This document shows, in pieces, positions 20,601-38,112 of a DNA stretch of 64,000 nucleotides (position 1 is the first letter of the stretch; every line of letters begins with the position of its first letter). Below the pieces are notes generated by a model that was not told where the DNA came from, searched no databases, and saw only the letters and a list, made by a program, of their open reading frames with translations. Where the stretch lies: NCBI GenBank assembly GCA_904063045.1, contig CAJFCJ010000019.1:3168684-3232683 (forward strand), read 5' to 3'. The position numbers were made by a program, and so were the translations under genes. The DNA comes from Dimorphilus gyrociliatus. Lineage: Eukaryota > Animalia > Annelida.

Positions 20601-23600
20601 TAAAATAATTTTGAATCATATATAACGATAAATTATTGTATTGTTGACGTTATATTTTGTCTTATTTTAATGGAATAGCCTTAATACATCCTACGTAAAT
20701 TTATGAATTAATACTTTTACGCAGTATATTTTGTATATATTATAAAAGTGTGTATATATAAAGCATTATTCATTCAGCCTGCACCTCGTAAATAGAACAT
20801 TTCGTAATATTATCCGCAAACTACAACCGCCATCGGCAATGGGTTTTTATCTGATATTCGAGGCGGCTTTTTCCTCATTCGTATAGATTCGCAACGGCCG
20901 ACAGGGAATGGGACCATCAATATAACTGTGTATGAATATGCATACTGTATGATAATCGGACCAAAATAAGTAAAATATTTGCATTGATGAAAACGATCCT
21001 TCATATTCTTTATAGTATACATACGATATGCATAAAAATATATGTACAATTTATACAGTATATATATATATACTGTATATATACTGTATATATGCCTTTA
21101 TGAGATAAAAGAGGCTAAAGTTCACGACATTCATATCAAAGGCCAAATTGATGGGGCGACGGAAGGTCTCGAAGGCGAGGCGCACGCCACGACCATAGTT
21201 AACATTCCGTTGTCACTGGTTTATCTTTGACTTGCCATCACGCTGAAGTGATCAGAAAGAGGGATAGAGAGTAAAGGAAAAGTGGTAATATAAAGAAAGC
21301 AATGAATGCATGCATGTACGTGTATATACGTGCCTATGTATAAAGTGTACGCTTTGTGTATACATACTGTGAAAGAGAGAGGCTTTGCTGACAGACATCT
21401 TGCGTACCCAGGTTCTGTTCGATTGTCTTTTTTTGCTGCTCTATATATTCGCCTACGATTCGGTCTTTAAAGTTTTAAGTATACTTATTCTTTAAGGTCA
21501 TTCCTTGTGCATGATTTTTTGCCACATGAATTTTTACCTCACTTTCTATACTCCTGGAACAGCGACAATAAGTGGGCAGTGAATGAGGCACTTGACAACT
21601 CGGCAATGGACATTAGATTCAATTAGGGCGTCGTGCCCCCGCATTGCCCAATGCTGCGCATGCAGGATAGCAGAGTAATATAGAAGAGACGGAAATACAC
21701 GACGAGTTAGATTGACGAGCGTATTGAATGGCCGACGGTTCTATACGCAATGTGATATCGCAGTCGAATGATTCGCCACAATCGAACTGTTCAAGCGACG
21801 GGCCTGAGAAATGCGTTGTGAGAAAGTCGCTCCCTTCTCGCCCTAACACAAACAACAACTTCAAAAGACGCCCGTTTGACGGTTTGCACATGTCTGCGGT
21901 TTGTCACAACAGGTATAGTGCGTGCACAACCATTTTAGAGAGTTGTAGACATTTTTTTCCTATCAGTCTTTCGCTCGGGTTTTTTTCTTTCCTCACAGGG
22001 TCAACAGTATAAGCGTTTTATTTACTCGAGCAATTGTGAACGTTTGTTAAGCTCGCCCTTACTCGATTATATAGCTTACACAAGCACAGAGTTTTTCAAT
22101 CTTTACCGGTTGGCCTACTTTTTTGTCCATCGCCCTATTATTTATAAACATCGTTCACCTTATCCGACCTACCTGACCCGATGGGGTGAGGCTATATAGA
22201 TATATACCCTCCCGCCACTCATTTTTTACTCTCTTCAATATAGAATCGATTTCTCTCTTTATGCCTTGTATGTGGTATGCACCTTATTTCTATTTCGCTT
22301 TCTCTCTACTCTCACCTCACGTATATATACAAAATTTCATACGCGGCTCTCGCTTTCGCTCCCACGCCGTGAACTTCAAAGTAATGCCGCCGTTGAAAAA
22401 TAGCAGTGACGGCACTTGACGCTAGCCTCCTACCACATCATCGCCACAGGCTTTTTCATTTTTACCTCTCTCGGTTTTAATATTTTTACACTGTTTAGCG
22501 GAAACCATACCGCACTGAAGCTCTTTAGCAATTGTTATTGTTATTATGGTATACCTCATCTATGTACGTGATTGTGCAAAGGAAGAAACGTCGCTATCCT
22601 AATCGTTTCTCTAAGAGACGTTCATTGTGATGCGACACGTCTCTTTATAATGAGTGGAGTATAAGTTTAGCGCTGATATGGCTTGATGTGACACTGATGA
22701 ATGTGCAGCGGTGCGTGTTAGTGGCGAGAAACGGCGTGGTTTGTTTGCCGCGCGTGTAGCAAAAGATAAGGGGACGGACGGCGGCTAATGAGAGTTAGAT
22801 AAGAGCAGTAAATCAATTAACGACCTGTTAAATGAGCGTCGCGTGTATATATAAGCTATCGGTTGAGAATGACCCTTCACCTCGTCGGGTCACCTCTCTT
22901 TACGTAGCCCCTACATGCAGCATATTTTTTCCACATTTAAGCAATTAATATCCTCACTGTTGTAATAAACCAACGAGTTGCAGGCAGTTTCCATATCCCT
23001 CTAATAAACGAATTATCATGTACTTTTAATCAATCATCCTTTATATTTACGTCTGAAATATTGTTGTTTATCCTTGAAAAATCTTTCAAACTTTTATTTA
23101 ATTTATTTTAAGCAAACTCGATAGTTAGGAAAGCTATCATCTTAAGACAGGTAGGTTAATGTAAAATAGAGTACAGGAGAGTGACGAGCTTATGAAGGAA
23201 GCAAGCGCTTTTATAAAGAATTTAACGTGAGAAAAAATGTATAGTGCGTGCCCTGTGACCTTAGAGGCGAGCATTTTCGGTCGAGGGACGCATTCTTCTT
23301 TCCCACGCTTGCGTACAGCGTCCGACATACGACACAAAGCGCGCATTTTATCCAAACATACGCGCGTCGCAATTACGCGTTTGCGCCTGTCATTCAACTG
23401 CTTTTTTCTGAAAGAAGAACCGAGAGATTTTTACCTACAATACGTATCAAATAATCACATTTTTATTACTTTCATTGATAAAAAAAATGCATGTGTGCAA
23501 ATATAAATGAGTAAATACATAAATATGTATAAATGAGTTTGTATCTGTGTATGTATTCGAAAAGGAAAAAAACTATACTCAGTAAACATACACTAAGAAA

Positions 23601-26600
23601 ATAGCAAAGAAAACAAGTGCCTAACGAGAGGAGTGTGAAGGTCGCCTACTGCCTGGGAATAACCTTTCACTCACTCGATTTCAACGACCTCTATCGGTTC
23701 TTCGACCAATTGCTAACCACTAATTAATGTCCGTGCTGCGAATTTCTGTCTCACTTATTTCAAGGAATACAAATAATAGAAATAAAATATTATGATCCCA
23801 AGATACATCAAAATAGATAAAACCTTTCTTTTTGTAATCTTTTTTTCATGAATTATTATTGTCCACTCTTAAATATGTAATAGTCGACAAATATGGATAG
23901 AAATTTTATATTCATCATGATATTGTTAGATACAGTCATACTTATTATACACTATATCATTCGATTATAGACGCACCATTACTGCATCGCTTTGTTAGAA
24001 GGCGCGTACTTCAAATCGCCAGGGTAACAACTCGTAATGAAATGTCAATAGCGAAGGCGTGCACTAAACCCATCCTACAAACAGACGTGCGTGTATGCAG
24101 TTTCCCTTTTTTTCATCCATTTTCAATTTCGTAGCCAGGTAGCACCACCCAATCTGCATAATCGAATTTAGTCGGCTACAGGCTTCGTCGTTTCTTAATC
24201 CTCTCTACAACTGCTTCTTACATCTGTAACCAACACCACGATATATTCTAGGTAATTTACCACTCGAAGTGATATTCGGCAATGTTTTTGAATTACAAAT
24301 ACTCATTTATATCTTGGCAATTATAGCTAAGCATTTTGCGCAATACCGTTTTGCGATTCCGGCGAGCGTCTCTATTGCCGTAAGTGGCTGTGGGTGGGTG
24401 TGCTTCTGTTTTGCATTCAGATTATTCTGCCAATCAGTTCATGCATGAGTGCATCTGTCGATCCATGTGAAAAATGGAAATTGTCCGACAGATCGTTGTC
24501 AAACGTGCCTCAATTATTGCGATGCTCACCAGCGTCGTTTTTTTGTTGGATTTAGTTTTTTTTGCAAAGAGAGCACGTTGTCGCTTAGGAATCATTTTAT
24601 TAACTTTTATAGTGACGAATTATATTCCTATAGAAAAAGTAGAATCTGAGGAAAAAATAAACACAGATAAAGCAGTGAGAAAGACAGCACCATCTGTTGT
24701 TTGAACTCTGACCCGAACTGGCAACACCTAATCCAGCCTGACCTCATTTCAGTGGCCAGTAAAGTTCTCTTTGAAGTGTATCGATTGCCGATCGCACAAC
24801 CTACTCGTCTGGAAAAGGTATATAGGGCGTATGTACGTTAATTACATCGATTATAAGATATGTACGGTTGGGTGTACATACACGTTCTTTATACATTTTC
24901 TTGTTCTCGTGAAGTAACATCAGCTACTGGAATTGTATACTCTTTAACCAGGAAGGTAATATGAATGTGTGCTATCCTCCAACTGCTATCCTCTTATATG
25001 TTTATAAGACACGCACTCACAGCTTGAAGCGTCTCTTGGCGCGTGATGTAACTGACGTCTGCAGTCGTCTCATCAGCACGTCAAACAACCTTGCACCGTC
25101 ACATGCTAATGACGCTCAAGCTAATTTAATATTTGCAACTCACCATCTCACTAACCCCGACTCTCTTCCGGTGAGGGGCTGAAAAGACTATAATTATATA
25201 CTCTATACACTGTGGGCTATGGTATTGCTGAGTATAGACGTATATAGCGATTGGGATTGAGGCGTGGCTAAGAGACGTTCTTCGCGACGCGGCTTATGCG
25301 ACGCCCTCAAAAGCGCATCCATCACGCCACTATCGTCGCAAACCGACGCCGAGCAAACTAATTGAAGCTTCGTTGACGCCCGGAAGATTGGTCTATTTGC
25401 ATAGAATCGACTGCTTCGTATATGAAAATACACCACATAGATTTAAATATTGCATACCACCATTATAATTGTTAGATAGAATATGCTGCAACCACAAAGC
25501 CCATTCAGAGTGGAGTCCTCTTAATGTTCTTAACGTATTACGCGGCTCACCGCAACAACATCACCTGAGCGACCGCAATACGACACGCGACACGCAAACT
25601 GGAGAGGTGAAGGTCACGGCCTCTTCGGCTACAGGGGTCGAATAGCCAACGACGTTCGAGCGTGCGCTACCGCAGAAAGGAGTTAACTTAATTAGTGGTC
25701 GCCGGTCACTGGTCAGTGGCAGCCTACAGCGTATAATCTATATTGCTGTAGCTATATTAACGCCGCTACTGCATCATGCAGTCTCTTAACAAGGCAGCCT
25801 TCAAGTTCATTTCCTGCCGCTCGAGGGCAAGCCACAATAATCAGCTTCCAGCACACAGTGTATTTAGATTTCAAAGGCTCTAATCACGAAAGGGGCGTCG
25901 AAGGTGAACAAAGCGTCACTAGTCGCCACTTCAAAGACCCGCTGAGGTTAGCGTCCGAGGGCGTCTCTAGACGGAAATTTTTCGCTCAACATTCAGATAT
26001 TCGATAACGTCAAAATTGAGACTGCACGCAGCATTCCCTACGTTAAAATCTCCAGCCGTGCTAGCGTGAGCCGCTAGGCGACAAGGAATGCTTTTGAAGA
26101 AATTGAAAACCTTCTATGCAGATATAGAGCTTTTGAAAAAAAAATTATATATATACGGTACATATATCTATTTATTAAGCGACGAATGAATTTGAGAGTT
26201 TTATATCAAGAATAAAGAAGCTTATATAGCTAAGAGAAAAGCTTTTACTTTTCAGTTCAAAAATGTAATAACTCTTTTTTATCTTGCCAGAATTGCTTCC
26301 TGAACTCGCATGGTTAAAGCGAGAACTCTTTTCTTACCGATTTTAGCAATTTCGAATGTTTTAGAAGTGCTTTTTGAAATTTTAGATTTCTTCTAGATTT
26401 TTTCTTTTTATTTAATAATATGTAAATTAAAATACCAAGCTTTGGAAACGCAGTTGTTAGCACAAGTAAGTAGCGCGCAGTAAATATCGTCCCAACTATT
26501 GTAGTCTACTTGACATTTTTCTACAGTCGAGTGCAGGTGGCAGGCTTTTCTATATGAGAATTCCTGATCTTTGAGCGGACGGAATTGGCGTAAAATGATT

Positions 26601-28006: not shown

Positions 28007-30909
28007 ATGGCGAATGATTCAACAACACCCCAGACTTCATCTACTCCTCTCTTCTGGTTACCGCAGACCTACGTAGCACCATCAGGCAATCACCCAATGG
28101 TAAGAACTAAGGACATTTTAACGGTCATATTTTGCTGTATACCCAGAGACACAAGCGTGTCTCTTTACTTCGTATATAACAAATACGCTTTTACGGGGTT
28201 TTACTAGTGACGATTTAACACTACAAGGGAATTATACCTAAGACTTAGACTTAGACAAACTGAAAACTGCGCGAGGCAGTGCATCGTTAAATCATCATGG
28301 TGGACGGTTATCGGATTTCGCTGTCCGGGCCGCGCCTACTCTAGTAATTTTCACCAAAGGCCAACTAGCTTTTGTATCTCGTTTAAATAGCAATGTAAAA
28401 GAGAGGCACAAAGATATAAAGGAGTTCTCCTTTCGACGCCTTTATTTCAAATTCATTCACCGTTTCTCAGCCGCGCGCATCCGCCATCACTCGACGCTCG
28501 TTTCTTTCCTTATCAGCCGTTTCGATCAGGGCGCCATCTATCGACCCGCATCCTCTTTGTTACTCAGCTAGTCTGTGAACTCTACAACAAAATTCACATG
28601 ATTGACTTAATAACTTAATAACTATTCCAAATTACTAAAATTACTGTGTTTTATTGTAGTTTGTCGCCGCCGCTGCTGCCGCTGCCCAGAATCCCATGGT
28701 GCAATATCCTATGACCGCTGCATCTTCTATAGATGAGTTGAATGCTGCTGTTGCTGCAGCCGTTCCCTCAGAGCAGACGGACCAAACAGATGCTGCTTCT
28801 ATCGTTAGTGCAGCTGTTACGACGACAAGTCAGCAGCAGCAGCTAACAACAACAACTATTACTACCAATACGCCTCCTGCGTCGACGACAGCAACTGAAA
28901 ATGAAATAGACAACCGGCGTTCAACATCTCCTCAAGTAACCGGTCCGAAGCGTTTACATGTGTCCAATATACCCTTTCGATATAGAGAAGCGGATCTTAG
29001 GGCCTTACTAGGCCAATTTGGCACCATTTTAGACGTTGAAATCATCTTCAACGAGCGTGGCTCTAAGGTATACAAAAGAGAAACACACATCATAACTAAC
29101 TTACATAACTTTTACAGTCGATTGCTGCGCCGCCCATTTCATTAAATATGAATAAATATTATAGTATATATAGCACGTGCTTGTAGGCTGCTGCAGCATG
29201 AACCACACTAACGGGTCTTGAACCGATTGTTAATATATACATGTATACATATACATACATACTTATATACGGGTATACTGTGCATATGTATGTATATATA
29301 TTTATATACTGTATATAAATTTATTTATTTATTTACAAGTAGCATTTACGGATAGACAAGAGTTAGGATATCTTTCTGCATAAAGTGTTAACGTTGTGTA
29401 TTTTAGCAATTATGCAAAATTAAAGTCAGAATAGTGTCGATACAACAAAGGAGATTACAACGTTTTTATCAGATTACATCAAACGCATGAAAACTTTCTC
29501 CTAGGTACCAAGATAGAAGAGAAACTTAAAAAAACTATCATTTTAGGCTTTGAGATAGTGTAAGAAAACTGGAGCTCTTTCTAAGCATTTACATCTATCA
29601 CATGCATACACATTTTCATTTTTCTAAGGCATTTATCACGAAATGATATAAGTTGATACTATTATTACATAAACTGTGCCGAATACGTTAAATTTAAACA
29701 TCTTGTTTTCAATACTACTTATATTGATGATTATGCATGTCTCTGCATACGTTGTATTAATGCATGCTATTGTCTCTCCTCCTGCATGCAGGGATTCGGT
29801 TTTGTGACGTTCGCGAATAGTGCTGATGCGGATCGGGCAAGAGAGAAAATGAACGGTCAAGTGGTTGAGGGCAGAAAAATAGAGGTGCATGTTTTTTTTC
29901 TTAAAAAAATATTGTTGTGAGAGTGTGTTGCATGCATGATTTGAACATATCTATCTACTTAAGTATATCTGGGCGGCAGTAGCAAAATAAACTGTGAGAG
30001 TGATCTTTTTCTCTCTTCACAGAGGCTGCCTGCCGGACTTTGTTTAAAAAAAAAAAATTTATGAGAGAGTGAGTGTGTTTGTCTTCGTTTGTGTGCAATT
30101 TTTTAACCGATCATGTGCTCAAAAATTAGGTTAACAACGCTACAGCAAGAATAATGACAAGAAAGAAAGATAGCACGGCAGCGGAGGCACTAAGAAGTAG
30201 TGTTGCAGCACTACAACGTTCTGGTAGAGTTCGTCCAACAGCTACTATTCCAATAGCTGGTCTCAGAACTCCTATTCAGATCCAATTACCAGGATTATTC
30301 CAAGATCCCTATTTGGCAAATTTAACAGCTGCATTTGGAGCAGAGAGATATCCGGTTAATATTTCTTTCCTATAGATGTCGCTACGTGTTATGCATTTAT
30401 ATAATGTCTTTACAGCACTTGGCCGCTACCTACGGTGCACGTTATGCTCTACCAACTGTAGCTACGGCAGCGTATACTGGTAATAGCGGGTATATATCAT
30501 AGTTTTCATATTTTTTTATATTTACCTAAGTAGATACATCGAAGATTGCATGTTGCGCAAATGTTTAAAGTTAATATACATAAAATGTTGACAGAATTGG
30601 CCGCGAACTTACTGCTGATCCTTACTTGGGACACAGCATAGGGCCAGTTGCAGGATATGGGGTACGTGTCACTAACATTTCTATAATGGCTGTTTCGCAA
30701 CAAGTGCATGATACTGTTTCTTTTCATTCTATCACTGCCATCTGATTTCAAAATCTTTCATTTTTTCAATATTCCTTCTGAACTATATCTCTTAGTTAGA
30801 AAGAGTTGTTTATTTGGTTTTACCAGGGGATGTTTTAAATTTTCCATTTTGTCAACAGGCCATTTACCGAGCAGCATCTGGTGGATACCAACGATTCGCT
30901 CCATATTAG
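28007..30909 (+). CDS. RBFOX: Rbfox (Fox-1/A2BP1) RRM splicing factor. Exons 28007-28099 (probable first), 28660-29067, 29792-29884, 30130-30354, 30416-30489, 30595-30661, 30859-30909
   Basis: [30 protein letters not shown]|[31 protein letters not shown]|[23 protein letters not shown] and C-terminal RFAPY* (PY-NLS); splice phases are consistent. Confidence 0.95.
29734..29938 (+). promoter_or_regulatory. Cluster of Rbfox-binding TGCATG elements around the 93-nt RRM exon
   Basis: TGCATG at 29734, 29761, 29783 (inside the 3' splice site), 29886 (overlapping the 5' splice site), 29929 and 29933. Confidence 0.85.
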
Positions 30910-31085: not shown

Positions 31086-32084
31086 TAATGAGTTCATTTC
31101 AGCTACGTATCTTCGCAGAAATAAACAATTGATGTAGCACATCAGCATCATTGTTTAAATAGTAAACAATAATGAAATATCTGGTGCTATTGTTTATTTC
31201 TGATTTTTTTTTCTGAAAAGTTACCGCCATTTACCGGCTTAGATACTTTGATCGGTTGCTCGTTTAAGGATCTACACTACGCACACACATTGTTTTCGTC
31301 TAATGTTTAAGATAATTATTGTGTGTCTGGTGGTGTATAATTTTATAGTTCTGGTGCTTCGCCCAGGTAGAAAATCTTGCCAAAGGAACCCACCGACTAT
31401 CGTAATCTGGGCAGGCTATAGTCTTCCTTCGACCCAATTACTTTGCCATGTTAAATTAAGTTTAGTCATAAAAGTTATGTATTATTTTTGACTAGTCATA
31501 AATTCATGTAAACAGTCTTGTAACAGTTAAATATTTTGTTTCTATGAATTTTTCCTTTTTGGTATTTTGCTTAATTATGTAAAGTGTAATGTTGTGATTA
31601 AACAAAATAAATGTAATGTGTGATTTATTAAATAAATTATTTGAAACTTCTGGAAACGCTATGAAAACGTAAACTAATTTAATCCGGTAGATGACAGCAG
31701 TAGTCTTATTTACAAACACAACTTGAATTTATGATAAAATACAAAGTTTCTGGAATTAAATAAAGTAATTTAACGAAAGTAAAAATATAAAAAGGTTTTA
31801 AGAGATATACACAACGTAAAATAATAGGTAGAGAGAAAACGCGGGCTCTGAAAGCTTTATTGTTGACAGAGATCGGAACACGAACCAGATTTTAAGCATA
31901 AAATAGTAAGACGGTCGATGATTGGTGGGAAACGGCCAGATCGGACAAAGAGCGGCGAATTACGGGCGAATAAGGATAGTTCTTACTTATTCTATGGCGG
32001 ATTCAAACAGAGCACCGAGGCAGAGCGTGTAGCGTTAGATCTCTGCCGCAAAAATCACATCAAAAGCGCTCTTTTTAAGACAGC

Positions 32085-35000
32085 ATGCCGCACGTGAACG
32101 GCGGTGGTGGTGACGATTTAGCGTCAACAGATGAGGTTAAAGTTTATAAAGATGAAGGTGAAGATGAGACAAGAGAGAACTTGTCAGAAGATAAACTTGG
32201 CCTTGTCACCGAGACTGAAGAGGTAAGAGAGCGTTTGATGTTTGTGTGCATGACCAGAGCAATGTAAAATTGAATTTTCAGGAGAAGAATGCAGATATTG
32301 GCGGTAATTATGAAGGCAAGTCTCAGAATGCCTCATCTGATGGTAAGTAAGCGTTCGGGCGTTACACGCCCACTTTCTCTTTACGTTTCTTCTTTATCGC
32401 CCGTTGACCTGCTTTCATCCGCCGCTTCCTTTCTCCTACCTCGGTTTCTTGAAAGGAAACGAACGCTTTAAAAAAATATTGACTATTTCCCTTAATACGG
32501 CTCTGCCGCCACCGATCGATGGATGAGTTAGAAAATTGTTATGAGAAAAGCGAGTTGAGCATTCGAATTGATTACCGCTAGATCGTTCTTTGATGTTGTA
32601 GAGCGCGCCTTCCGTATGGCCGCTTCTTCAGTCTAAGAGAAGTTTGTTTGTCGGTGATTATTAAACGGCCGCGAGGTGTGACATTTTAGATTCCGCCGCA
32701 AAATAATGACTGCAAAAAAAAAGCGCTCGAGTGCAGTACTGTGAGAAAATAGGTCAGCTTTGATACTCTTCCTTTGATGTTCGTATTCTTTGATAGTCTT
32801 TCACGCGTCGACTTGTTTGTATTTCTGTTTGCTTGCAGGTTTTCTCTTATTGTTTTTCTCCTCCTGTATGCACTATGTATTCTCTTAGAAGGTAGAAACG
32901 ACGCACATCGACTATCCGCCTAATTATTGCATAAATACGCTCTTGTCGGCAAAGATGAAAGGCGCGCGAAAACTTTCATTTTTGATGGCGTCTAAGAGCC
33001 CACGCTCAACAACGATGAGGCTATAGCTTTTCACTGTTGTCGCTTCCCTAATCCCCAAAGAAATTTAAAGTCGTAACTAATAAGTTCCTACTCGAGATAA
33101 TATATTAACTGATACGACAGGATCAAAGAACGACGCCGCCATCAACGAACGTCTTTTTGGTATAGCTGGATTTCCGCTAGTCACTCCTTATCCGCCTGGA
33201 TATCCACCCGGTTTGGTAAGTGTTTTCTTTTTTCATTTTACTCAATCGAGCGGACCGTTCAACACCGACAGCTATCTACGTATTTACCAAGACATGAATG
33301 TCTTGCGAGTACACAAACATACTTCGCAAATGTCAATATTCGCTTTAGCCTTAGATAAGAACTTAAAGAATTTACGAATATGCATGCTTTACTGTTTCGT
33401 AGACGCTAGATGCGTCTACAACATATAAACGAACGTTCGGCAACATCAAAGCGCATTGATTCGTGTCACCTGTAGACGCCATAGGCGTAGAGCCGGACAC
33501 GTAGTCATTAAATATGCAATATAGACGTTCTACAACGATGCTGACCGTCGTCTGCGGTTTTTTCTCGCTTATCGACTTACTCTATATATCGATAGGCTAT
33601 CGAACAACTCTGAGCTACGCTCATGGCGTTATTAAATTAACTTTATTAGCGACAACACCTGGCTTTGTCGTCTACGGCGCTGTCAACAAGGCACACGACG
33701 CCCTGCCGCAAAGCAGATGAGCTGACGGCTGCAGGAAACGTCGGCGTCACAAAGGGACTGTCCAAGGCCGATTAGCTGCACTAGTAATTACTTTGATCTC
33801 TGCTCGCTGACGCCCGTCTAGCTTCTCTAATATCGCAAGCGCGTCTCCCTACGTCGTCATGACTACGCTTTGTTGACAAATCTGCGTATTAATTCGATAA
33901 GCGCCGTAGATAAGAATATTTTATATATATAGATATATATATATATATACATATATATATACAATACTTTACATTGTAGAAGTATATTTTGTATATTTTA
34001 CCGTAGATTATTTTATACTTATTTATTTACATTTCAACAAAACAACACTCGGTTGATTTTAGAATGTTTTATTGAGAATTCTTTTATACATTTTAATATG
34101 CGGTATGGATACTCTGTATGCGTAGACATCCTTGACTAGCCTGCTTCGGCTGGTGGTCATTACTTAGCAGATGGCGCCAGTGCGTCGCTATTGTACGAAT
34201 GTGACGCCCCGGAAAAGGTGCGAGTGACTTGGACAATGAAGTGATGAGGGCGTCATTATACTCGCAAGATGAGCACGCACAACGGACGAATTATGAAGAG
34301 ATGGTGCTGATTGGGCATCTAGAAAAATGACGCGTGTTTGGCCTGTAGTAGCCACTCAGTGTGTGCGTGACGCCCAGCAGCAGCCAGGTAACGCCGCATC
34401 GATCCGTAATCAGAACATCAAAGGCAGCGGCCGACATCAAAGGATGGAGAACAGTGGCTCCCCCGTTTGGCTGCGTGCTCAAGCTTTTCGCGCGTTTCTC
34501 CAACGATTTACCGACCTGTACTACAAATACACTGTAGCGCAGGTAAGAGGAGAGAAGGCGTATATATAACAGCTACTACGTGCGCAATCAGCTGACATCA
34601 AAGAACATCGTAGGGCTAATTACGTTTGTCCAAACTACTAATTGTCTACGTCATCAATGCAGTCGTTCGACCGTGATAATCTGTAATTGGCAGGCGTGTA
34701 GGATAATTTTCGAGGGAGCGTTTTACTGAGCGTCGCTGCTCAGAGATATTCGCAATAGAAGCAGCAACGACGGCATCTCTAATTGTTTTACCCGTTACAA
34801 ACGTCTGCCTTTGATGTTGCCGTTCGACGTTGCGCAGACTGCGACGGCATCTCCTTAACATCAAAGGGACTGCGCTTTACGCCTCACTGAACGTAGTTCG
34901 TGCCAAATTACGCTCGATTGCGCATGCGCATGGCCGCCGTAAAGCGTCTAATTGTAGATGTTTAACGATAAAGGAAGAATGTTTTTCAGGGCGGAAGAGT

Positions 35001-38000
35001 TGGCAGCTTTTCAGCTCACTCATCAAACCCGTTCGGCGTCTACGGCTATGACCATTTAGCGTCTCCTCCTCCGGCCCATATGGGCATACCGCCCGTCCAT
35101 ATCGATCCAAAAACTGGTAAGTACAAGTAGTTAGTATTTTAGAATAGGGTAGCCGCTTGCCACCCTGAGGCTATTCCTAAACTTCAAAGGAATTCTGCAT
35201 TTTTTCCCCCTTTCCAGTCATCACCGTTAGCTGTCGTTTCATTTTTGGGTAACGATTAGTTTAATCTAGTTATACCGTTAGTAGAGACGCGTAAGCGTAC
35301 GTGGAGGGCGGTTCCTTCTGACGCCAAAGGCGGAGCCAACTGCAACGTCGGATGAAAGTATCGCGTCGCTTTGATGCAAACGCCATCTTACGCAGTTTGG
35401 CATGCGTTAGGTACAATGTTCAAAAAGTACAAACCTTTTGATGATGTAGACTTCTAACGTGGCTTGCCTCTGCTAGATAATAGGGCGCTGTGTGGCGTCG
35501 GCTTTCAAAAGCTCGACGCCTCGTACTTGCGCGTGTGTGCGTCACTTTGACTCGCGCTTGCCGTCGGAATGAGAAAAAAATTATAAAATGAACGAGCAGC
35601 AACAAAATGAATGGGACTCTTGTTGGAATGCAGCTGCCAGTGACTGTGTGTGGCAGCAGCAAGGTCCTAGCGCTATTAAAAAAAGTTTGCTTACTTAGAC
35701 TAGTTTTTAAAAAAAAGTCTTTGCAACAGGTTTACCAAGACCACCAATGTATGGTCTGCCTCCTCCACCCACCGGACATTTGAGTGCCCTCTACCCAGAA
35801 CTTTCCAGTTGGTGAGTTTCATACTGAGTTTCTTTAGTTCAGTTTTTAAAGAGTTTTTTTGCTGATTTTGCTGTTTTCTTTGCAGGCACTCCCCTCCCGG
35901 TTCACCGTTCAGTGCATCGTCATTACGTAATCCCTACCATACAACCCTAGCCAATAGTCCTCTGGCACGCTTTTCGCCTCCAGGCTTACTACCCCCACCA
36001 GGAATACACCCAAGTGTACATTCATCGCACCAAGGTCTGCTGAAATGCGAGAATGATGGAAGCAGGTATGTCGTAATATATTTTAAACGAAATGATAGAG
36101 ACAAACCGAGGAGGCGCTTTACGCTTTGCCGCGCAAGTAGGTCAGGACGTTGAAGATGAAAGCGTCGAATCGCTTTGATGTTGGCCGGCAGGCACTAATC
36201 GCGTTGTACGAGTTACGATGCAATATACTTAACACAAGGAGAGAAGAGATGACGACGATTTCTAATAGTAGTCCTAAAGAACGTACCGATGTTGAGAGTA
36301 TAAATTAAAACGTAACAATATAGTAGCTCTTACTGCCTCCTCCAGAATCGACGATAACGCGTCTAATATGAATTCTTGCCGGAAAAATCACATAAAGAAG
36401 CCGTTAAACGCGTTTATGTTGTTTATGAAAGAGATGAGACCAAAAGTGGTAGAGGAGTGCGCCTTAAGGGAATCAGCGTTAATCAACCAAATTTTGGGAC
36501 GAAGGGTGAGAATTTTTTGTTTCTTTTACAGGTTAAACGGTGACGCTGGTTCGTCAGGCACGTCAACCGCGAGCGAGGATCAAAAACCTAGGCGTCCATA
36601 TGTAAAAAAGCCGCTAAATGCGTTCATGTTGTTTATGAAAGAAATGAGACAGAAAGTAGTAGAAGAATGCACCCTGAAAGAATCTGCAGCGATAAATCAA
36701 ATACTCGGCCGTAAGGTAAAGCCATTGCGCGGACGATGTAATCTTGCTGGCTGAGTTTTTCTCGTCTATGTTGGTGCGAACGTAGACATCATCGCCTTAT
36801 CAAATTTTTTATATAAAATATGTAGTTAGCATCAGCAGACCCTTGCTCATTCTACTGTATTTTTGACGGTTTTACTGATATAATCGTTTGACCTTTTTCC
36901 TCATTCAAATAACAGTGGCACGCATTAGATCGAGCTGAACAGGCTAAATATTATGACATGGCAAGAAAAGAAAAAGAACTTCACATGCAGCTTTATCCAG
37001 GATGGTCAGCTAGAGACAATTATGCTACTCATACAAAGAAGAAGAAGCGTAAACGAGCCTCAGAGGGTCAATCAGCAGGCAATCAGAGTATCAACAGCGA
37101 TTGTGAGTTTTTTTCTACTGAAAACTGTATCTTAAACGCGTTGAATCACTCTTCAGACGGCAACAGTCAAGCGAAGAAATGCAGAGCCCGTTTTGGCGTT
37201 GAACAACAGAGTCAGTGGTGCAAGCCGTGCAGGTATAGTTCTTTCACGATATTGAAGCTTCTTAATTGTGTATCAATTTGAACGCACTTTTTAAACAATC
37301 TTTATAATTATCAATTAAACTCTGATATTAATAACTGTGGACGCTTATTTCATGGAAGTGACTGGAACAGGTCAGATGCTGCTTCACCCGTGTGTGCTGG
37401 TTCATTATTACAGAATAGTTGTGGTGGTCTTGAACAACCCATCACCTCTTTACATCCTTCGAACGCTGCTCAGGTTGCCGATGCGTGACGCTGCAGGTGA
37501 CGCCGATAAAGCATGCGTCGTTTTTTGTTGTGACGCCACAGCTGTCCTCGTTGTGTACCGGTGGGTTCACCACCGTTCAAGTGAAGGATAGTGTATCGTC
37601 ACGAATTGGAGCATGAGACAGCACTGAAATGCATTTTTTCTTGTTGTTAATTTTGTTAGTTAATTGACGCTGCTTGTTAGATGCAGCAGCACTGCGGTTG
37701 GGTGTTACTAAACTGAATATTTGGTATTTCATACCGCAGTGCTGTCTCAAAAATATTAAGGCTAATTGTAATTGTGATAAATTTAGGAGATAAGTTTTTC
37801 GCTTTTTGCCGAGGAAAGCATGAAGCCGTCTGCATGATCAATTACTGACTTTTATATCGAGTTTTAACCGTCTGTTCTTTATTATACAGGAGGAAGAAGA
37901 AATGCATTAGATTCTTAACGGGCGATGAAGAAGTAGGTGGAAGTGATCTGGATAGTGACGCCTGTGATGAGTTAAGCGTCGCTTCACCTTCATCAAGTGA

Positions 38001-38112
38001 GGCTCCAGCCAGTCCTCGACCTTCAGTAGACGGGGAACATCCTCTGGCATTAACATCGAAAACTCCAGGCCCATCACTCACTCCTACTCGTCAACCGCTT
38101 CTAGCCACATGA
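32085..38112 (+). CDS. TCF: TCF/LEF (pangolin). Exons 32085-32222, 32282-32342, 33121-33215, 34990-35116, 35730-35811, 35886-36065, either 36346-36505 or 36532-36715, 36916-37102, 37157-37232, 37890-38112
   Basis: Beta-catenin-binding N-terminus ([16 protein letters not shown]), [21 protein letters not shown] box [15 protein letters not shown]...WSARDNYA, basic tail KKKKRKR and C-clamp [20 protein letters not shown]|RKKKCIR. Confidence 0.96.
33922..33960. repeat. (TA)n microsatellite
   Basis: Near-perfect TA run in TCF intron 3. Confidence 0.85.
34444..34542 (+). CDS. TCF: Candidate alternative first exon of TCF (isoform lacking the beta-catenin-binding domain)
   Basis: ATG-initiated 33 codons ([33 protein letters not shown]) ending at a CAG|GTAAGA donor in phase 0, matching the phase-0 acceptor at 34990. 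Confidence 0.5.
36346..36505 (+). CDS. TCF: TCF HMG-box 5' exon, copy A (alternative exon)
   Basis: CCTCCAG acceptor, GTGAGA donor; encodes ...[39 protein letters not shown]; enters in phase 2 and exits in phase 0. Confidence 0.85.
36532..36715 (+). CDS. TCF: TCF HMG-box 5' exon, copy B (alternative exon, canonical sequence)
   Basis: TTTTACAG acceptor, GTAAAG donor; encodes ...[39 protein letters not shown]; same phases as copy A. Confidence 0.9.

What the first reader, a model, noticed from the sequence alone, without database searches (positions are those of the whole stretch)
34327..34542. Candidate internal promoter and first exon producing a dominant-negative TCF
Seen: within the 1.8-kb intron 3 there is an ATG-initiated exon with a textbook donor (CAG|GTAAGA) in the correct phase for exon 4. 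Two ACATCAAAG sites lie immediately before the ATG (34417, 34436), another follows the donor (34597), and a CTCF-like motif is upstream (34164). The product would keep the repression region, HMG box and C-clamp but lack the beta-catenin-binding domain. Established: vertebrate TCF7 and LEF1 make such dominant-negative forms from intronic promoters. Inference: a Wnt-inducible negative feedback isoform from a single invertebrate TCF gene.
Basis: partly seen in the sequence, partly recalled or inferred. Interest (0 to 1): 0.75.

Follow-up and report, generated by a model that had tools for sequence, protein, structure and literature searches.

The report
Unproven short-TCF exon in worm intron
The start-codon-plus-splice-donor "exon" inside the Wnt effector gene TCF of the tiny marine worm Dimorphilus gyrociliatus is really in the sequence and is already the first exon of a public gene model, but available RNA data join the normal exons around it and read straight through it, so it more likely marks a transcribed Wnt-responsive control region than the start of a proven dominant-negative TCF.

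Summary
The window is identical to Dimorphilus gyrociliatus (annelid) scaffold CAJFCJ010000019.1. All sequence features hold. There is an in-frame ATG at 34327 and another at 34444. The donor CAG|GTAAGA follows 34542, in phase 0 with exon 4 (34990).

The exon is not new. It is the first coding exon of public model DgyrCDS12093 (424 aa). That model exists because the annotation splits the single TCF gene at its 1,774-nt intron 3.

RNA contigs from two runs join exon 3 to exon 4 and show no 34542→34990 junction. One contig reads unspliced through the donor. RNA does cover 34039-34785, in one run at about half the exon depth while the other introns there are empty. Any such transcript carries 8-11 upstream ATGs. 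The 72-aa peptide has no relative among 1.8 billion representative proteins.

Best reading (about 0.5): a transcribed intronic Wnt-responsive regulatory module, plus a chance ORF that the gene predictor picked up. A real minor ΔN-TCF isoform is not excluded (about 0.25).

Also found: molluscs have genuine ΔN-TCF mRNAs whose conserved alternative first exon splices to the homologous exon. Published CAGE-seq would decide the question.

The parts
34327..34542 (+). Candidate alternative first exon (72 codons from ATG 34327; 33 codons from ATG 34444). It is identical to the first CDS exon of public model DgyrCDS12093 / CAD5123784.1.
34543..34548 (+). Consensus splice donor GTAAGA, phase 0. No RNA junction was found that uses it.
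34415..34442 (+). Two ACATCAAAG TCF/HMG sites (34415-34423 and 34434-34442), separated by GCAGCGGCCG and ending 2 nt before ATG 34444.
34595..34603 (+). ACATCAAAG site downstream of the donor.
34809..34817 (-). ACATCAAAG site. Its extended flank GGCAACATCAAAGGCAG is shared with the sites at 33443 and 34415.
34858..34866 (+). ACATCAAAG site.
33443..33451 (+). ACATCAAAG site in the 5' half of intron 3.
34164..34178 (+). CTCF-like motif TTAGCAGATGGCGCC. In this species CTCF motifs lie mostly close to TSSs (PMC7854359).
33913..34035 (.). TA-rich low-complexity block just upstream of the point where RNA coverage begins. The switch from TA-rich to GC-rich sequence fits the species' promoter pattern.
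34039..35018 (.). Stretch of intron 3 present in RNA-library contigs. X7 has 34039-34345 and 34559-34785 at depth 3.4-4.2, against 7.7 for exons. X1 has 34115-35018 continuous at depth 24 against about 212. The strand is unknown.
33121..33215 (+). TCF exon 3, spliced directly to exon 4 in RNA contigs of two runs.
34990..35116 (+). TCF exon 4 (GGRVGSF...[18 protein letters not shown]). It is the homologue of vertebrate exon III and the acceptor exon of the mollusc deltaN isoforms.
33650..33775 (+). 'Terminal exon' of the public 139-aa N-terminal model (inferred from the length arithmetic). No RNA junction 33215->33650 was seen.
32085..32222 (+). TCF exon 1 encoding the beta-catenin-binding motif (Pfam CTNNB1_binding, E 2.9e-05).

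Best explanation
The 34327-34542 'exon' is an ORF plus a strong donor lying inside a regulatory stretch of the unusually long intron 3 (1,774 nt; the species median is 66 nt) of the single TCF gene of Dimorphilus gyrociliatus.

The public annotation split this gene at that intron. It gave the 3' half (DgyrCDS12093, 424 aa) exactly this ORF as its initial exon. Real TCF mRNA splices exon 3 to exon 4.

The DNA from about 34.04 to 34.87 kb (TA-rich block, CTCF-like motif, five exact ACATCAAAG sites) is best read as an intragenic Wnt-responsive cis-regulatory module. Through it, TCF/beta-catenin would regulate the TCF gene itself. Like active enhancers and promoters, it is transcribed, giving mostly unspliced RNA that does not encode a TCF protein.

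Shown: the sequence features, the split annotation, the exon 3->4 junction, RNA coverage of the segment, and read-through of the donor.

Inferred: enhancer function, TCF occupancy and autoregulation.
For: 1. The window is identical to GCA_904063045.1 CAJFCJ010000019.1 (0 mismatches over 19,786 nt).
2. The record carries two adjacent models. One is 139 aa with CTNNB1_binding (window 32085-33775). The other is 424 aa with an HMG box and starts at 34327.
3. RNA contigs in two runs (X1 at depth about 212; X7 at 7.7) join 33215->34990. No joint is listed for 34542->34990 or for 33215->33650.
4. The X1 contig 34115-35018 is continuous across the donor. X7 covers 34559-34785 (3.4) about as deeply as 34039-34345 (4.2). 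In X7, intron 2, the 5' half of intron 3 and intron 4 have depth 0, which argues against DNA contamination or general intron retention in that run.
5. Six metatranscriptome libraries (X3-X8) from three studies hold 21-44% of the sampled words of 33100-35120. Exons 3 and 4 alone would give about 8% by my estimate.
6. ACATCAAAG occurs 12 times against 1.02 expected, with 9 of the 12 sites in 3.6 kb. CTCF-like motifs are enriched, and in this species they lie near TSSs and open chromatin. Long introns in this species tend to carry ATAC peaks.
7. There are 8-11 upstream ATGs between the contig starts and ATG 34327.
8. The peptide has no relatives and no Pfam family.
9. No Rfam family and no repeat explains the RNA.
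Against: - Contigs cannot show strand, TSS or rare junctions, so a low-abundance spliced isoform could have been dropped.
- The only raw-read run (X24) laid 0 reads and is no test.
- The donor is a rare, perfect consensus in the right phase.
- The annotation pipeline gave weight 10 to PASA transcript assemblies, so the model might rest on a real transcript.
- RNA at about half the exon depth in X7 is high for a typical unstable enhancer RNA.
- DeltaN-TCF isoforms spliced to the homologous exon exist in molluscs and vertebrates (PMC9303524), which raises the prior for a real isoform here.
Confidence: 0.5

Rival explanations
1. There is a genuine alternative promoter in intron 3. Transcripts start upstream of the ORF, use the 34542 donor and splice to exon 4. 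The product is a deltaN (dominant-negative-type) TCF that keeps the HMG box and C-clamp. The flanking TCF sites make it a Wnt-induced negative-feedback isoform. It would be minor or restricted to a stage or condition.
For: - The in-frame ATGs, the rare consensus donor and the phase match.
- The public model P0002 uses exactly this exon.
- RNA contigs start at 34039 and 34115, just after a TA-rich block and next to a CTCF-like motif.
- In X7 only this part of the introns is covered.
- There are no variants in 34327-34542 in X1, against about 1.1 per 100 nt in the flanking intron. This is weak (P about 0.09 by my estimate).
- Mollusc and vertebrate deltaN isoforms enter at the homologous exon (PMC9303524).
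Against: - No 34542->34990 joint appears in the contigs of two RNA runs, while every canonical joint does.
- The X1 contig is unbroken across the donor.
- X7 coverage continues downstream of the donor.
- The leader has 8-11 uATGs.
- The peptide is an orphan.
- The opposite strand is equally open.
- The sister 'terminal exon' of the split annotation also has no RNA support, which points to ab initio prediction.
Confidence: 0.25
2. The RNA is plain slow splicing or partial retention of a long intron. It is pre-mRNA, the ORF and donor are chance, and the segment has no promoter activity. The TCF sites may still be an enhancer, but that would be unrelated to the RNA signal.
For: - In X1 both halves of intron 3 (33222-33734 at depth 21.8; 34115-35018 at 24.4) and intron 4 (38) are covered at about 10-18% of exon depth. 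The contigs abut exons 3 and 4.
- The genome paper reports more retention for longer introns in this species.
Against: - In X7 only 34039-34785 is covered, at about half the exon depth, while the 5' half of intron 3 and introns 2 and 4 are empty.
- In X1 intron 2 (778 nt) has a depth of only 2-4.
Confidence: 0.12
3. An independent non-coding transcript, possibly antisense or a divergent pair, is hosted in intron 3. It arises from the nucleosome-free TCF-site core, and the candidate exon lies between or within its arms.
For: - The X7 contigs flank a 213-nt gap (34346-34558) that holds the twin TCF sites and the candidate exon. The run's word share of 0.30 matches my sum of the laid pieces, so the gap looks real for that assembly.
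- The strand of all the contigs is unknown.
Against: - X1 covers the gap continuously.
- At depth 3-4, gaps arise by chance.
- No Rfam family matches.
- No splice joint was seen on either strand.
Confidence: 0.08

Closest known systems
Vertebrate deltaN/dnTCF isoforms of TCF7, LEF1 and TCF7L2 made from intronic promoters
   Same: - The position matches: the promoter or first exon lies in the intron just upstream of the exon encoding ...PPPAH...DPKTG (vertebrate exon III, exon 4 here).
- The predicted product lacks the beta-catenin-binding domain and keeps the HMG box.
- TCF7 is itself a Wnt target whose deltaN form acts as a feedback inhibitor (PMC4999783 for dnTCF7; PMC9303524 for the exon III start sites).
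   Different: - Here no TSS and no splice junction has been shown.
- The first exon would add an orphan 33-72 aa peptide rather than starting inside the shared exon.
[quoted passage not shown]
Mollusc TCF/pangolin deltaN isoforms (RefSeq models and Logan cDNA contigs)
   Same: - An alternative first coding exon replaces the beta-catenin-binding N-terminus and splices to the homologue of exon 4.
- Mytilus galloprovincialis isoform X3 (P0025) is identical to full-length isoform X2 (P0013) from GSKFQPP onward, apart from one 24-residue internal insertion in X3.
- In Pinctada the alternative exon lies 5.6 kb upstream of that exon.
   Different: - The mollusc exon encodes a conserved Cys-rich motif (MPVCIWPDTCLLGC). 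It is shared by bivalves and, in diverged form, by gastropods, and it is backed by uninterrupted cDNA contigs.
- The Dimorphilus peptide shows no similarity to it. The best HMM hit anywhere in the locus has E 0.049, on the opposite strand.
- There is no TCF-site cluster around the Pinctada exon.
Intronic/intragenic Wnt-response-element clusters of Wnt feedback targets (e.g. Axin2, naked cuticle, Notum; own knowledge), bound by C-clamp TCFs
   Same: - Dense SCTTTGATS sites lie inside a Wnt-pathway gene.
- This TCF has a C-clamp.
- Helper-like GC motifs are about 3 times denser in 32.5-36.2 kb than in the whole window.
   Different: - The target is the TCF gene itself.
- Occupancy and Wnt responsiveness are untested.
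- Strict RCCGCC helper sites are few and are not consistently next to the HMG sites.
Split gene models at atypically long introns (annotation artefact)
   Same: - Two same-strand neighbouring models together make one TCF orthologue.
- RNA joins across the split.
- Neither the added terminal exon nor the added initial exon has junction support.
   Different: The initial exon coincides with a segment that is transcribed and rich in regulatory motifs, so a real minor isoform cannot be excluded.

Membership tests
deltaN/dnTCF isoform from an intronic promoter | Transcription start site inside an intron downstream of the beta-catenin-binding exons | tested here: inconclusive
   RNA contigs begin at 34039 (X7) and 34115 (X1), but contigs cannot show a TSS or a strand. 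The raw-read run X24 laid 0 reads.
deltaN/dnTCF isoform from an intronic promoter | The alternative first exon is joined in frame to the downstream TCF exons in RNA | tested here: not met
   No 34542->34990 joint appears in X1 or X7. X1 reads through the donor. All canonical joints are present. Contigs can miss rare forms.
deltaN/dnTCF isoform from an intronic promoter | The predicted protein lacks the beta-catenin-binding domain but keeps the HMG box (and the C-clamp) | tested here: met
   P0002 has an HMG_box (E 2.3e-21), no CTNNB1_binding domain, and the C-clamp KKCRARFG...WCKPCRRKKKC.
deltaN/dnTCF isoform from an intronic promoter | The protein is made and antagonises beta-catenin/TCF activation | not testable with these tools
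   This needs an isoform-specific antibody or tag and a reporter assay.
Wnt-responsive element (WRE) cluster / autoregulatory enhancer | Clustered high-affinity TCF HMG sites (SCTTTGATS) | tested here: met
   ACATCAAAG occurs 12 times against 1.02 expected, with 9 sites in 32588-36181. CTTTGATS occurs 25 times against 5.83 expected.
Wnt-responsive element (WRE) cluster / autoregulatory enhancer | C-clamp helper sites (RCCGCC) near the HMG sites | tested here: inconclusive
   Helper-like motifs run at 2.7 per kb against 0.94 per kb for the window. Only 7 strict RCCGCC lie in 31.5-37 kb, and they are not regularly adjacent to the HMG sites. GCGGCC lies between the twin sites.
Wnt-responsive element (WRE) cluster / autoregulatory enhancer | Open chromatin, TCF/beta-catenin occupancy and a response to Wnt activation | not testable with these tools
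   ATAC-seq and CAGE exist for the species (PRJEB37657, PMC7854359), but the peak tables are not held.
Split gene-model artefact | Adjacent same-strand models carry complementary parts of one orthologue, and RNA joins them | tested here: met
   The 139-aa model has CTNNB1_binding and the 424-aa model has the HMG box. The 33215->34990 joint is seen in two runs.

The most novel reading that the evidence does not exclude
An internal promoter in the intron just upstream of the [10 protein letters not shown] exon, producing a deltaN-TCF, is not a vertebrate innovation. It would be an old bilaterian (or at least lophotrochozoan plus vertebrate) feature. Molluscs have a conserved alternative first exon at that position, vertebrate TCF7/LEF1 deltaN forms start at the homologous exon, and the Dimorphilus exon would be the annelid counterpart. 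In Dimorphilus it would be wired to a TCF-site cluster as a Wnt-induced negative-feedback isoform of a single-copy TCF gene.
Probability: 0.18. Interest if true: 0.75.

Novelty: new member of a known kind. Interest (0 to 1): 0.4.

Why it matters
A real isoform here would mean that a single-copy invertebrate TCF gene builds its own Wnt-inducible antagonist. Reviews currently list that arrangement as a vertebrate innovation (PMC9303524).

As the evidence stands, three practical points follow:
1. The public Dimorphilus annotation splits TCF into two genes. Analyses that use DgyrCDS12093 as 'the' TCF lack its beta-catenin-binding domain.
2. The long intron 3 carries a strong candidate for an autoregulatory Wnt-responsive element, and it is transcribed.
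3. Mollusc data show that deltaN-TCF mRNAs do exist outside vertebrates. This makes the evolutionary question directly testable with existing CAGE and RNA-seq data.

Tried and rejected
- Raw-read RNA run X24 laid 0 reads on 31900-36100, and X3 laid 0 contigs. Neither is a test.
- The word search with the 90-aa open frame found only the unspliced 80-aa ORF cluster.
- The word search with P0002 residues 1-72, at full-length candidate sizes, found nothing.
- The exhaustive HMMER search of 1.84 billion representatives found only the ORF itself and one spurious low-complexity hit.
- The metagenome-contig scan found only exon-4 homologues of other animals. The two hits that seemed to extend into the candidate exon were translated intron.
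- Pfam found nothing on the peptide.
- A profile of the mollusc alternative N-terminus, run against the six-frame translation of the locus, gave no credible hit.
- Rfam and repeat searches of the intron found no ncRNA family or mobile element that would explain the RNA.
- CpG o/e is high across the whole 5' half of the gene, so it does not single out a promoter.
- The genome paper's supplement holds no CAGE or ATAC tables. The DgyrG12092 entries in the differential-expression table could not be mapped safely to the NCBI CDS numbers.
- An internal cassette exon spliced from exon 3 is rejected. The only joint leaving 33215 goes to 34990.
- The only joined form I used was the public protein P0002, by its id.
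Full report
IDENTITY OF THE LOCUS

The + strand carries one TCF/pangolin gene. RNA joints and the sequence define these exons:
- exon 1, 32085-32222. It encodes [26 protein letters not shown] and matches Pfam CTNNB1_binding at E 2.9e-05.
- exon 2, 32282-32342.
- exon 3, 33121-33215.
- exon 4, 34990-35116.
- exon 5, 35730-35811.
- exon 6, from 35886.

Two tandem HMG-box 5' exons follow near 36395 and 36605, and a C-clamp exon near 37174. An Rbfox gene ends at 30909 upstream.

A cluster look-up of the candidate ORF returned the NCBI protein CAD5123784.1, DgyrCDS12093 of Dimorphilus gyrociliatus. The fetched locus from GCA_904063045.1 (CAJFCJ010000019.1) is identical to the window over 19,786 nt. 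Record coordinate equals window coordinate plus 3,168,683. The organism is therefore the miniature annelid D. gyrociliatus. The 'coral metagenome' RNA libraries that hold the stretch presumably contain this worm; that is my inference, not something the tools show.

THE OBSERVATION

- Intron 3 is 1,774 nt.
- Frame 0 is open from 34297 to 34566, with ATGs at 34327 and 34444.
- The donor is CAG|GTAAGA after 34542, in phase 0 like exon 4.
- AGGTAAG is rare: 3 on the + strand of the window and 1 on the - strand. Two of the + strand copies are the exon-1 donor and this one.
- The motif is strongly enriched: 12 sites against 1.02 expected, with 9 of them within 32588-36181. CTTTGATS gives 25 against 5.83.
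- The CTCF-like motif is at 34164-34178. Such matches are also enriched in the window, 12 against 1.45, and three lie between Rbfox and the TCF start codon.

Two things weaken the coding argument. The opposite strand is open over the same stretch. ATG-open frames of 33 or more codons ending at looser G|GTRAG donors in phase 0 occur 6 times on the + strand of the window.

THE EXON IS ALREADY ANNOTATED, IN A SPLIT GENE

The public record holds two adjacent + strand models:
- a 139-aa model at window 32085-33775, with CTNNB1_binding;
- a 424-aa model at window 34327-38112, with the HMG box.

The 424-aa protein (P0002) begins MTRVW...YKYTVAQ|GGRVGSF. It therefore uses ATG 34327 and the 34542->34990 splice.

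The 139-aa length equals exons 1-3 plus 33650-33775, including the stop codon. That is an added terminal exon inside intron 3 (my arithmetic).

The annotation combined AUGUSTUS, protein alignments and PASA assemblies in EvidenceModeler. The species' median intron is 66 nt (PMC7854359). A 1,774-nt intron is about 27 times that median, which is the kind of place where ab initio predictors split genes. This last point is inference.

RNA EVIDENCE

I had one search for runs and one lay of reads.

X1 (an RNA-type run; its spliced contigs show that it is RNA):
- One contig at depth 212.8 joins exon 1 to 2 to 3 to the start of exon 4.
- A 905-nt contig at depth 24.4 covers 34115-35018 without interruption. 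It passes through the candidate exon, its donor and the would-be 447-nt intron into exon 4.
- Another contig at depth 21.8 covers 33222-33734.
- Intron 2 has a depth of only 2-4.

X7 (a metatranscriptome from a different study):
- One contig at depth 7.7 joins exons 1-6 canonically.
- Contigs cover 34039-34345 (depth 4.2) and 34559-34785 (depth 3.4).
- Intron 2, the 5' half of intron 3 and intron 4 have depth 0.

Neither run shows a 34542->34990 or a 33215->33650 joint.

The word shares of six metatranscriptome libraries (X3-X8) from three studies are 0.21-0.44 of 33100-35120. That is far above the roughly 0.08 I estimate for exons 3 and 4 alone. Part of intron 3 is therefore recurrently present in RNA libraries. 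For X7, the share of 0.30 matches the sum of the laid pieces.

Limits of this evidence:
- Contigs give no strand and no TSS, and they drop rare variants.
- The only raw-read run laid 0 reads.
- X3 laid nothing because of a filter.

What the RNA shows:
- Full-length TCF mRNA is the main form.
- The 3' half of intron 3 is transcribed beyond what general intron retention explains, at least in X7.
- The RNA covering the candidate exon is mostly not spliced at its donor. In that unspliced form the ORF ends at 34567 after 80 aa (P0001) and cannot reach the TCF frame.

OTHER TESTS OF THE CODING READING

- If transcripts start where the contigs start, 8 (from 34115) or 11 (from 34039) upstream ATGs precede ATG 34327. 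The canonical leader has one.
- The 72-aa peptide has no Pfam family.
- It has no relative in two word searches, none in metagenome contigs, and none among 1.84 billion representative proteins.
- X1 differs from the window at about 1.1 sites per 100 nt of intron but at none of the 216 nt of the candidate exon. By my estimate that is P about 0.09, and binding-site constraint explains it as well as coding does.

THE REGULATORY READING

The genome paper reports four relevant points for this species:
- CTCF motifs are the commonest motif in open chromatin and lie mostly near TSSs.
- Promoters show upstream TA enrichment and downstream GC enrichment.
- 944 intronic ATAC peaks sit in introns much longer than the rest.
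- Longer introns are retained more often.

The segment fits this picture. A TA-rich block (33913-34035) is followed by GC-rich DNA, the CTCF-like motif at 34164, five exact TCF sites between 34415 and 34866, and local RNA. No Rfam family or repeat accounts for the RNA.

I therefore read 34.04-34.87 kb as an active intragenic regulatory module, either enhancer-like or a weak promoter. Through it TCF/beta-catenin probably acts on the TCF gene itself. Occupancy and Wnt responsiveness are inferred, not shown.

COMPARISON WITH KNOWN SYSTEMS

Vertebrates. TCF7, LEF1 and TCF7L2 make deltaN forms from intronic promoters. The TCF7 and LEF1 deltaN forms start in exon III, which is the homologue of exon 4 here. 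[quoted passage not shown]

Annelids. The Platynereis Tcf study describes eight isoforms defined by their C-terminal region, including two alternative HMG exons. It describes no deltaN form (PMC5996498).

Molluscs. The search for relatives of P0002 residues 73-424 gave an unexpected result.
- Many mollusc TCF proteins carry a different N-terminus without the beta-catenin motif.
- In bivalves it reads ...VAQEKDWLLIRTKMPVCIWPDTCLLGC.... In gastropods it reads MCSTC...MPVCPSVCPSCPLC...CTVRCLLELGGKF.
- This N-terminus joins exactly at the exon-4 homologue.
- Mytilus galloprovincialis isoform X3 is identical to full-length isoform X2 from GSKFQPP onward, apart from one 24-residue internal insertion in X3.
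- A 362-aa example is one uninterrupted ORF on 2.2-2.4-kb Logan contigs from two runs, so it is cDNA.
- In Pinctada imbricata the alternative exon lies 5.6 kb upstream of the exon-4 homologue, with no TCF-site cluster around it.

DeltaN-TCF mRNAs therefore exist outside vertebrates and enter at the same exon. However, the Dimorphilus peptide is unrelated to the mollusc exon and still lacks junction evidence.

VERDICT

Probabilities:
- About 0.5: a transcribed intronic Wnt-responsive module, plus a chance ORF and donor used by a split gene model.
- About 0.25: a real but minor or condition-specific deltaN-TCF first exon.
- About 0.12: plain intron retention.
- About 0.08: an independent or antisense non-coding RNA.

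Public CAGE, ATAC and stage RNA-seq data for this species (PRJEB37657) would settle the matter. I could not reach them with these tools.

The only joined form used was the public protein P0002, by its id.

Noticed in passing
window 35588-35663 and 35664-35729: X1 RNA shows an alternative splice inside intron 4. A contig covering 35089-35661 joins to exon 5 with a 66-nt GT..AG intron (exon end 35663), at depth 38 against 157.6 for the canonical joint. Read from exon 4, the transcript hits a stop at 35128, leaving a truncated protein with only the beta-catenin-binding part. However, ATG 35588 opens the [29 protein letters not shown], which is in phase with exon 5. It was not seen in X7.
   Followed up: partly
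proteins P0004, P0012, P0015, P0016, P0025, P0028, P0049, P0063 (bivalves) and P0014, P0018, P0038, P0040 (gastropods); L013:10001-10192; L011, L012: Molluscs have a conserved Cys-rich alternative N-terminus (MPVCIWPDTCLLGC and relatives). It replaces the beta-catenin-binding domain of TCF and splices to the exon-4 homologue. It is supported by RefSeq isoforms of one gene and by uninterrupted cDNA contigs. I found no paper describing it, and the literature treats deltaN start sites as a vertebrate innovation. Several arthropod models also begin just before [10 protein letters not shown]; these may be deltaN forms or truncated models.
   Followed up: partly
window ~36395 and ~36605; L013:23288-23470 and 23530-23715: The tandem duplicated exon encoding the start of the HMG box ([15 protein letters not shown]...) is also duplicated in the pearl oyster Pinctada imbricata. 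It is described as two alternative HMG exons in Platynereis (PMC5996498). The pair is therefore shared by annelids and a bivalve, not specific to Dimorphilus.
   Followed up: partly
window 32085-33775 and 34327-38112 (record CAJFCJ010000019.1): The public annotation splits the single TCF gene into a 139-aa model and a 424-aa model. The 139-aa model ends in a 'terminal exon' at 33650-33775 that has no RNA junction support.
   Followed up: yes
window 31072, 31223 (-), 31684, 34164 and eight other places: CTCF-like motifs are enriched in the window (12 against 1.45 expected). Three lie in the 1.2 kb between the end of Rbfox and the TCF start codon.
   Followed up: partly
window 32745-32800: Three TCF-type sites lie within about 45 nt of intron 2, on the minus strand (ATCAAAG, ACATCAAAG, ATCAAAG). 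They are part of the wider array of sites in the gene.
   Followed up: no
window 33222-33734: In X1 the 5' part of intron 3 is covered at depth about 22, starting right after exon 3 and stopping at 33734. It is followed by an uncovered gap of about 380 nt. This may be read-through with an intronic 3' end, giving a product with only the beta-catenin-binding part, or it may be an assembly break. The only ATTAAA signals are at 33507 and 33631.
   Followed up: no
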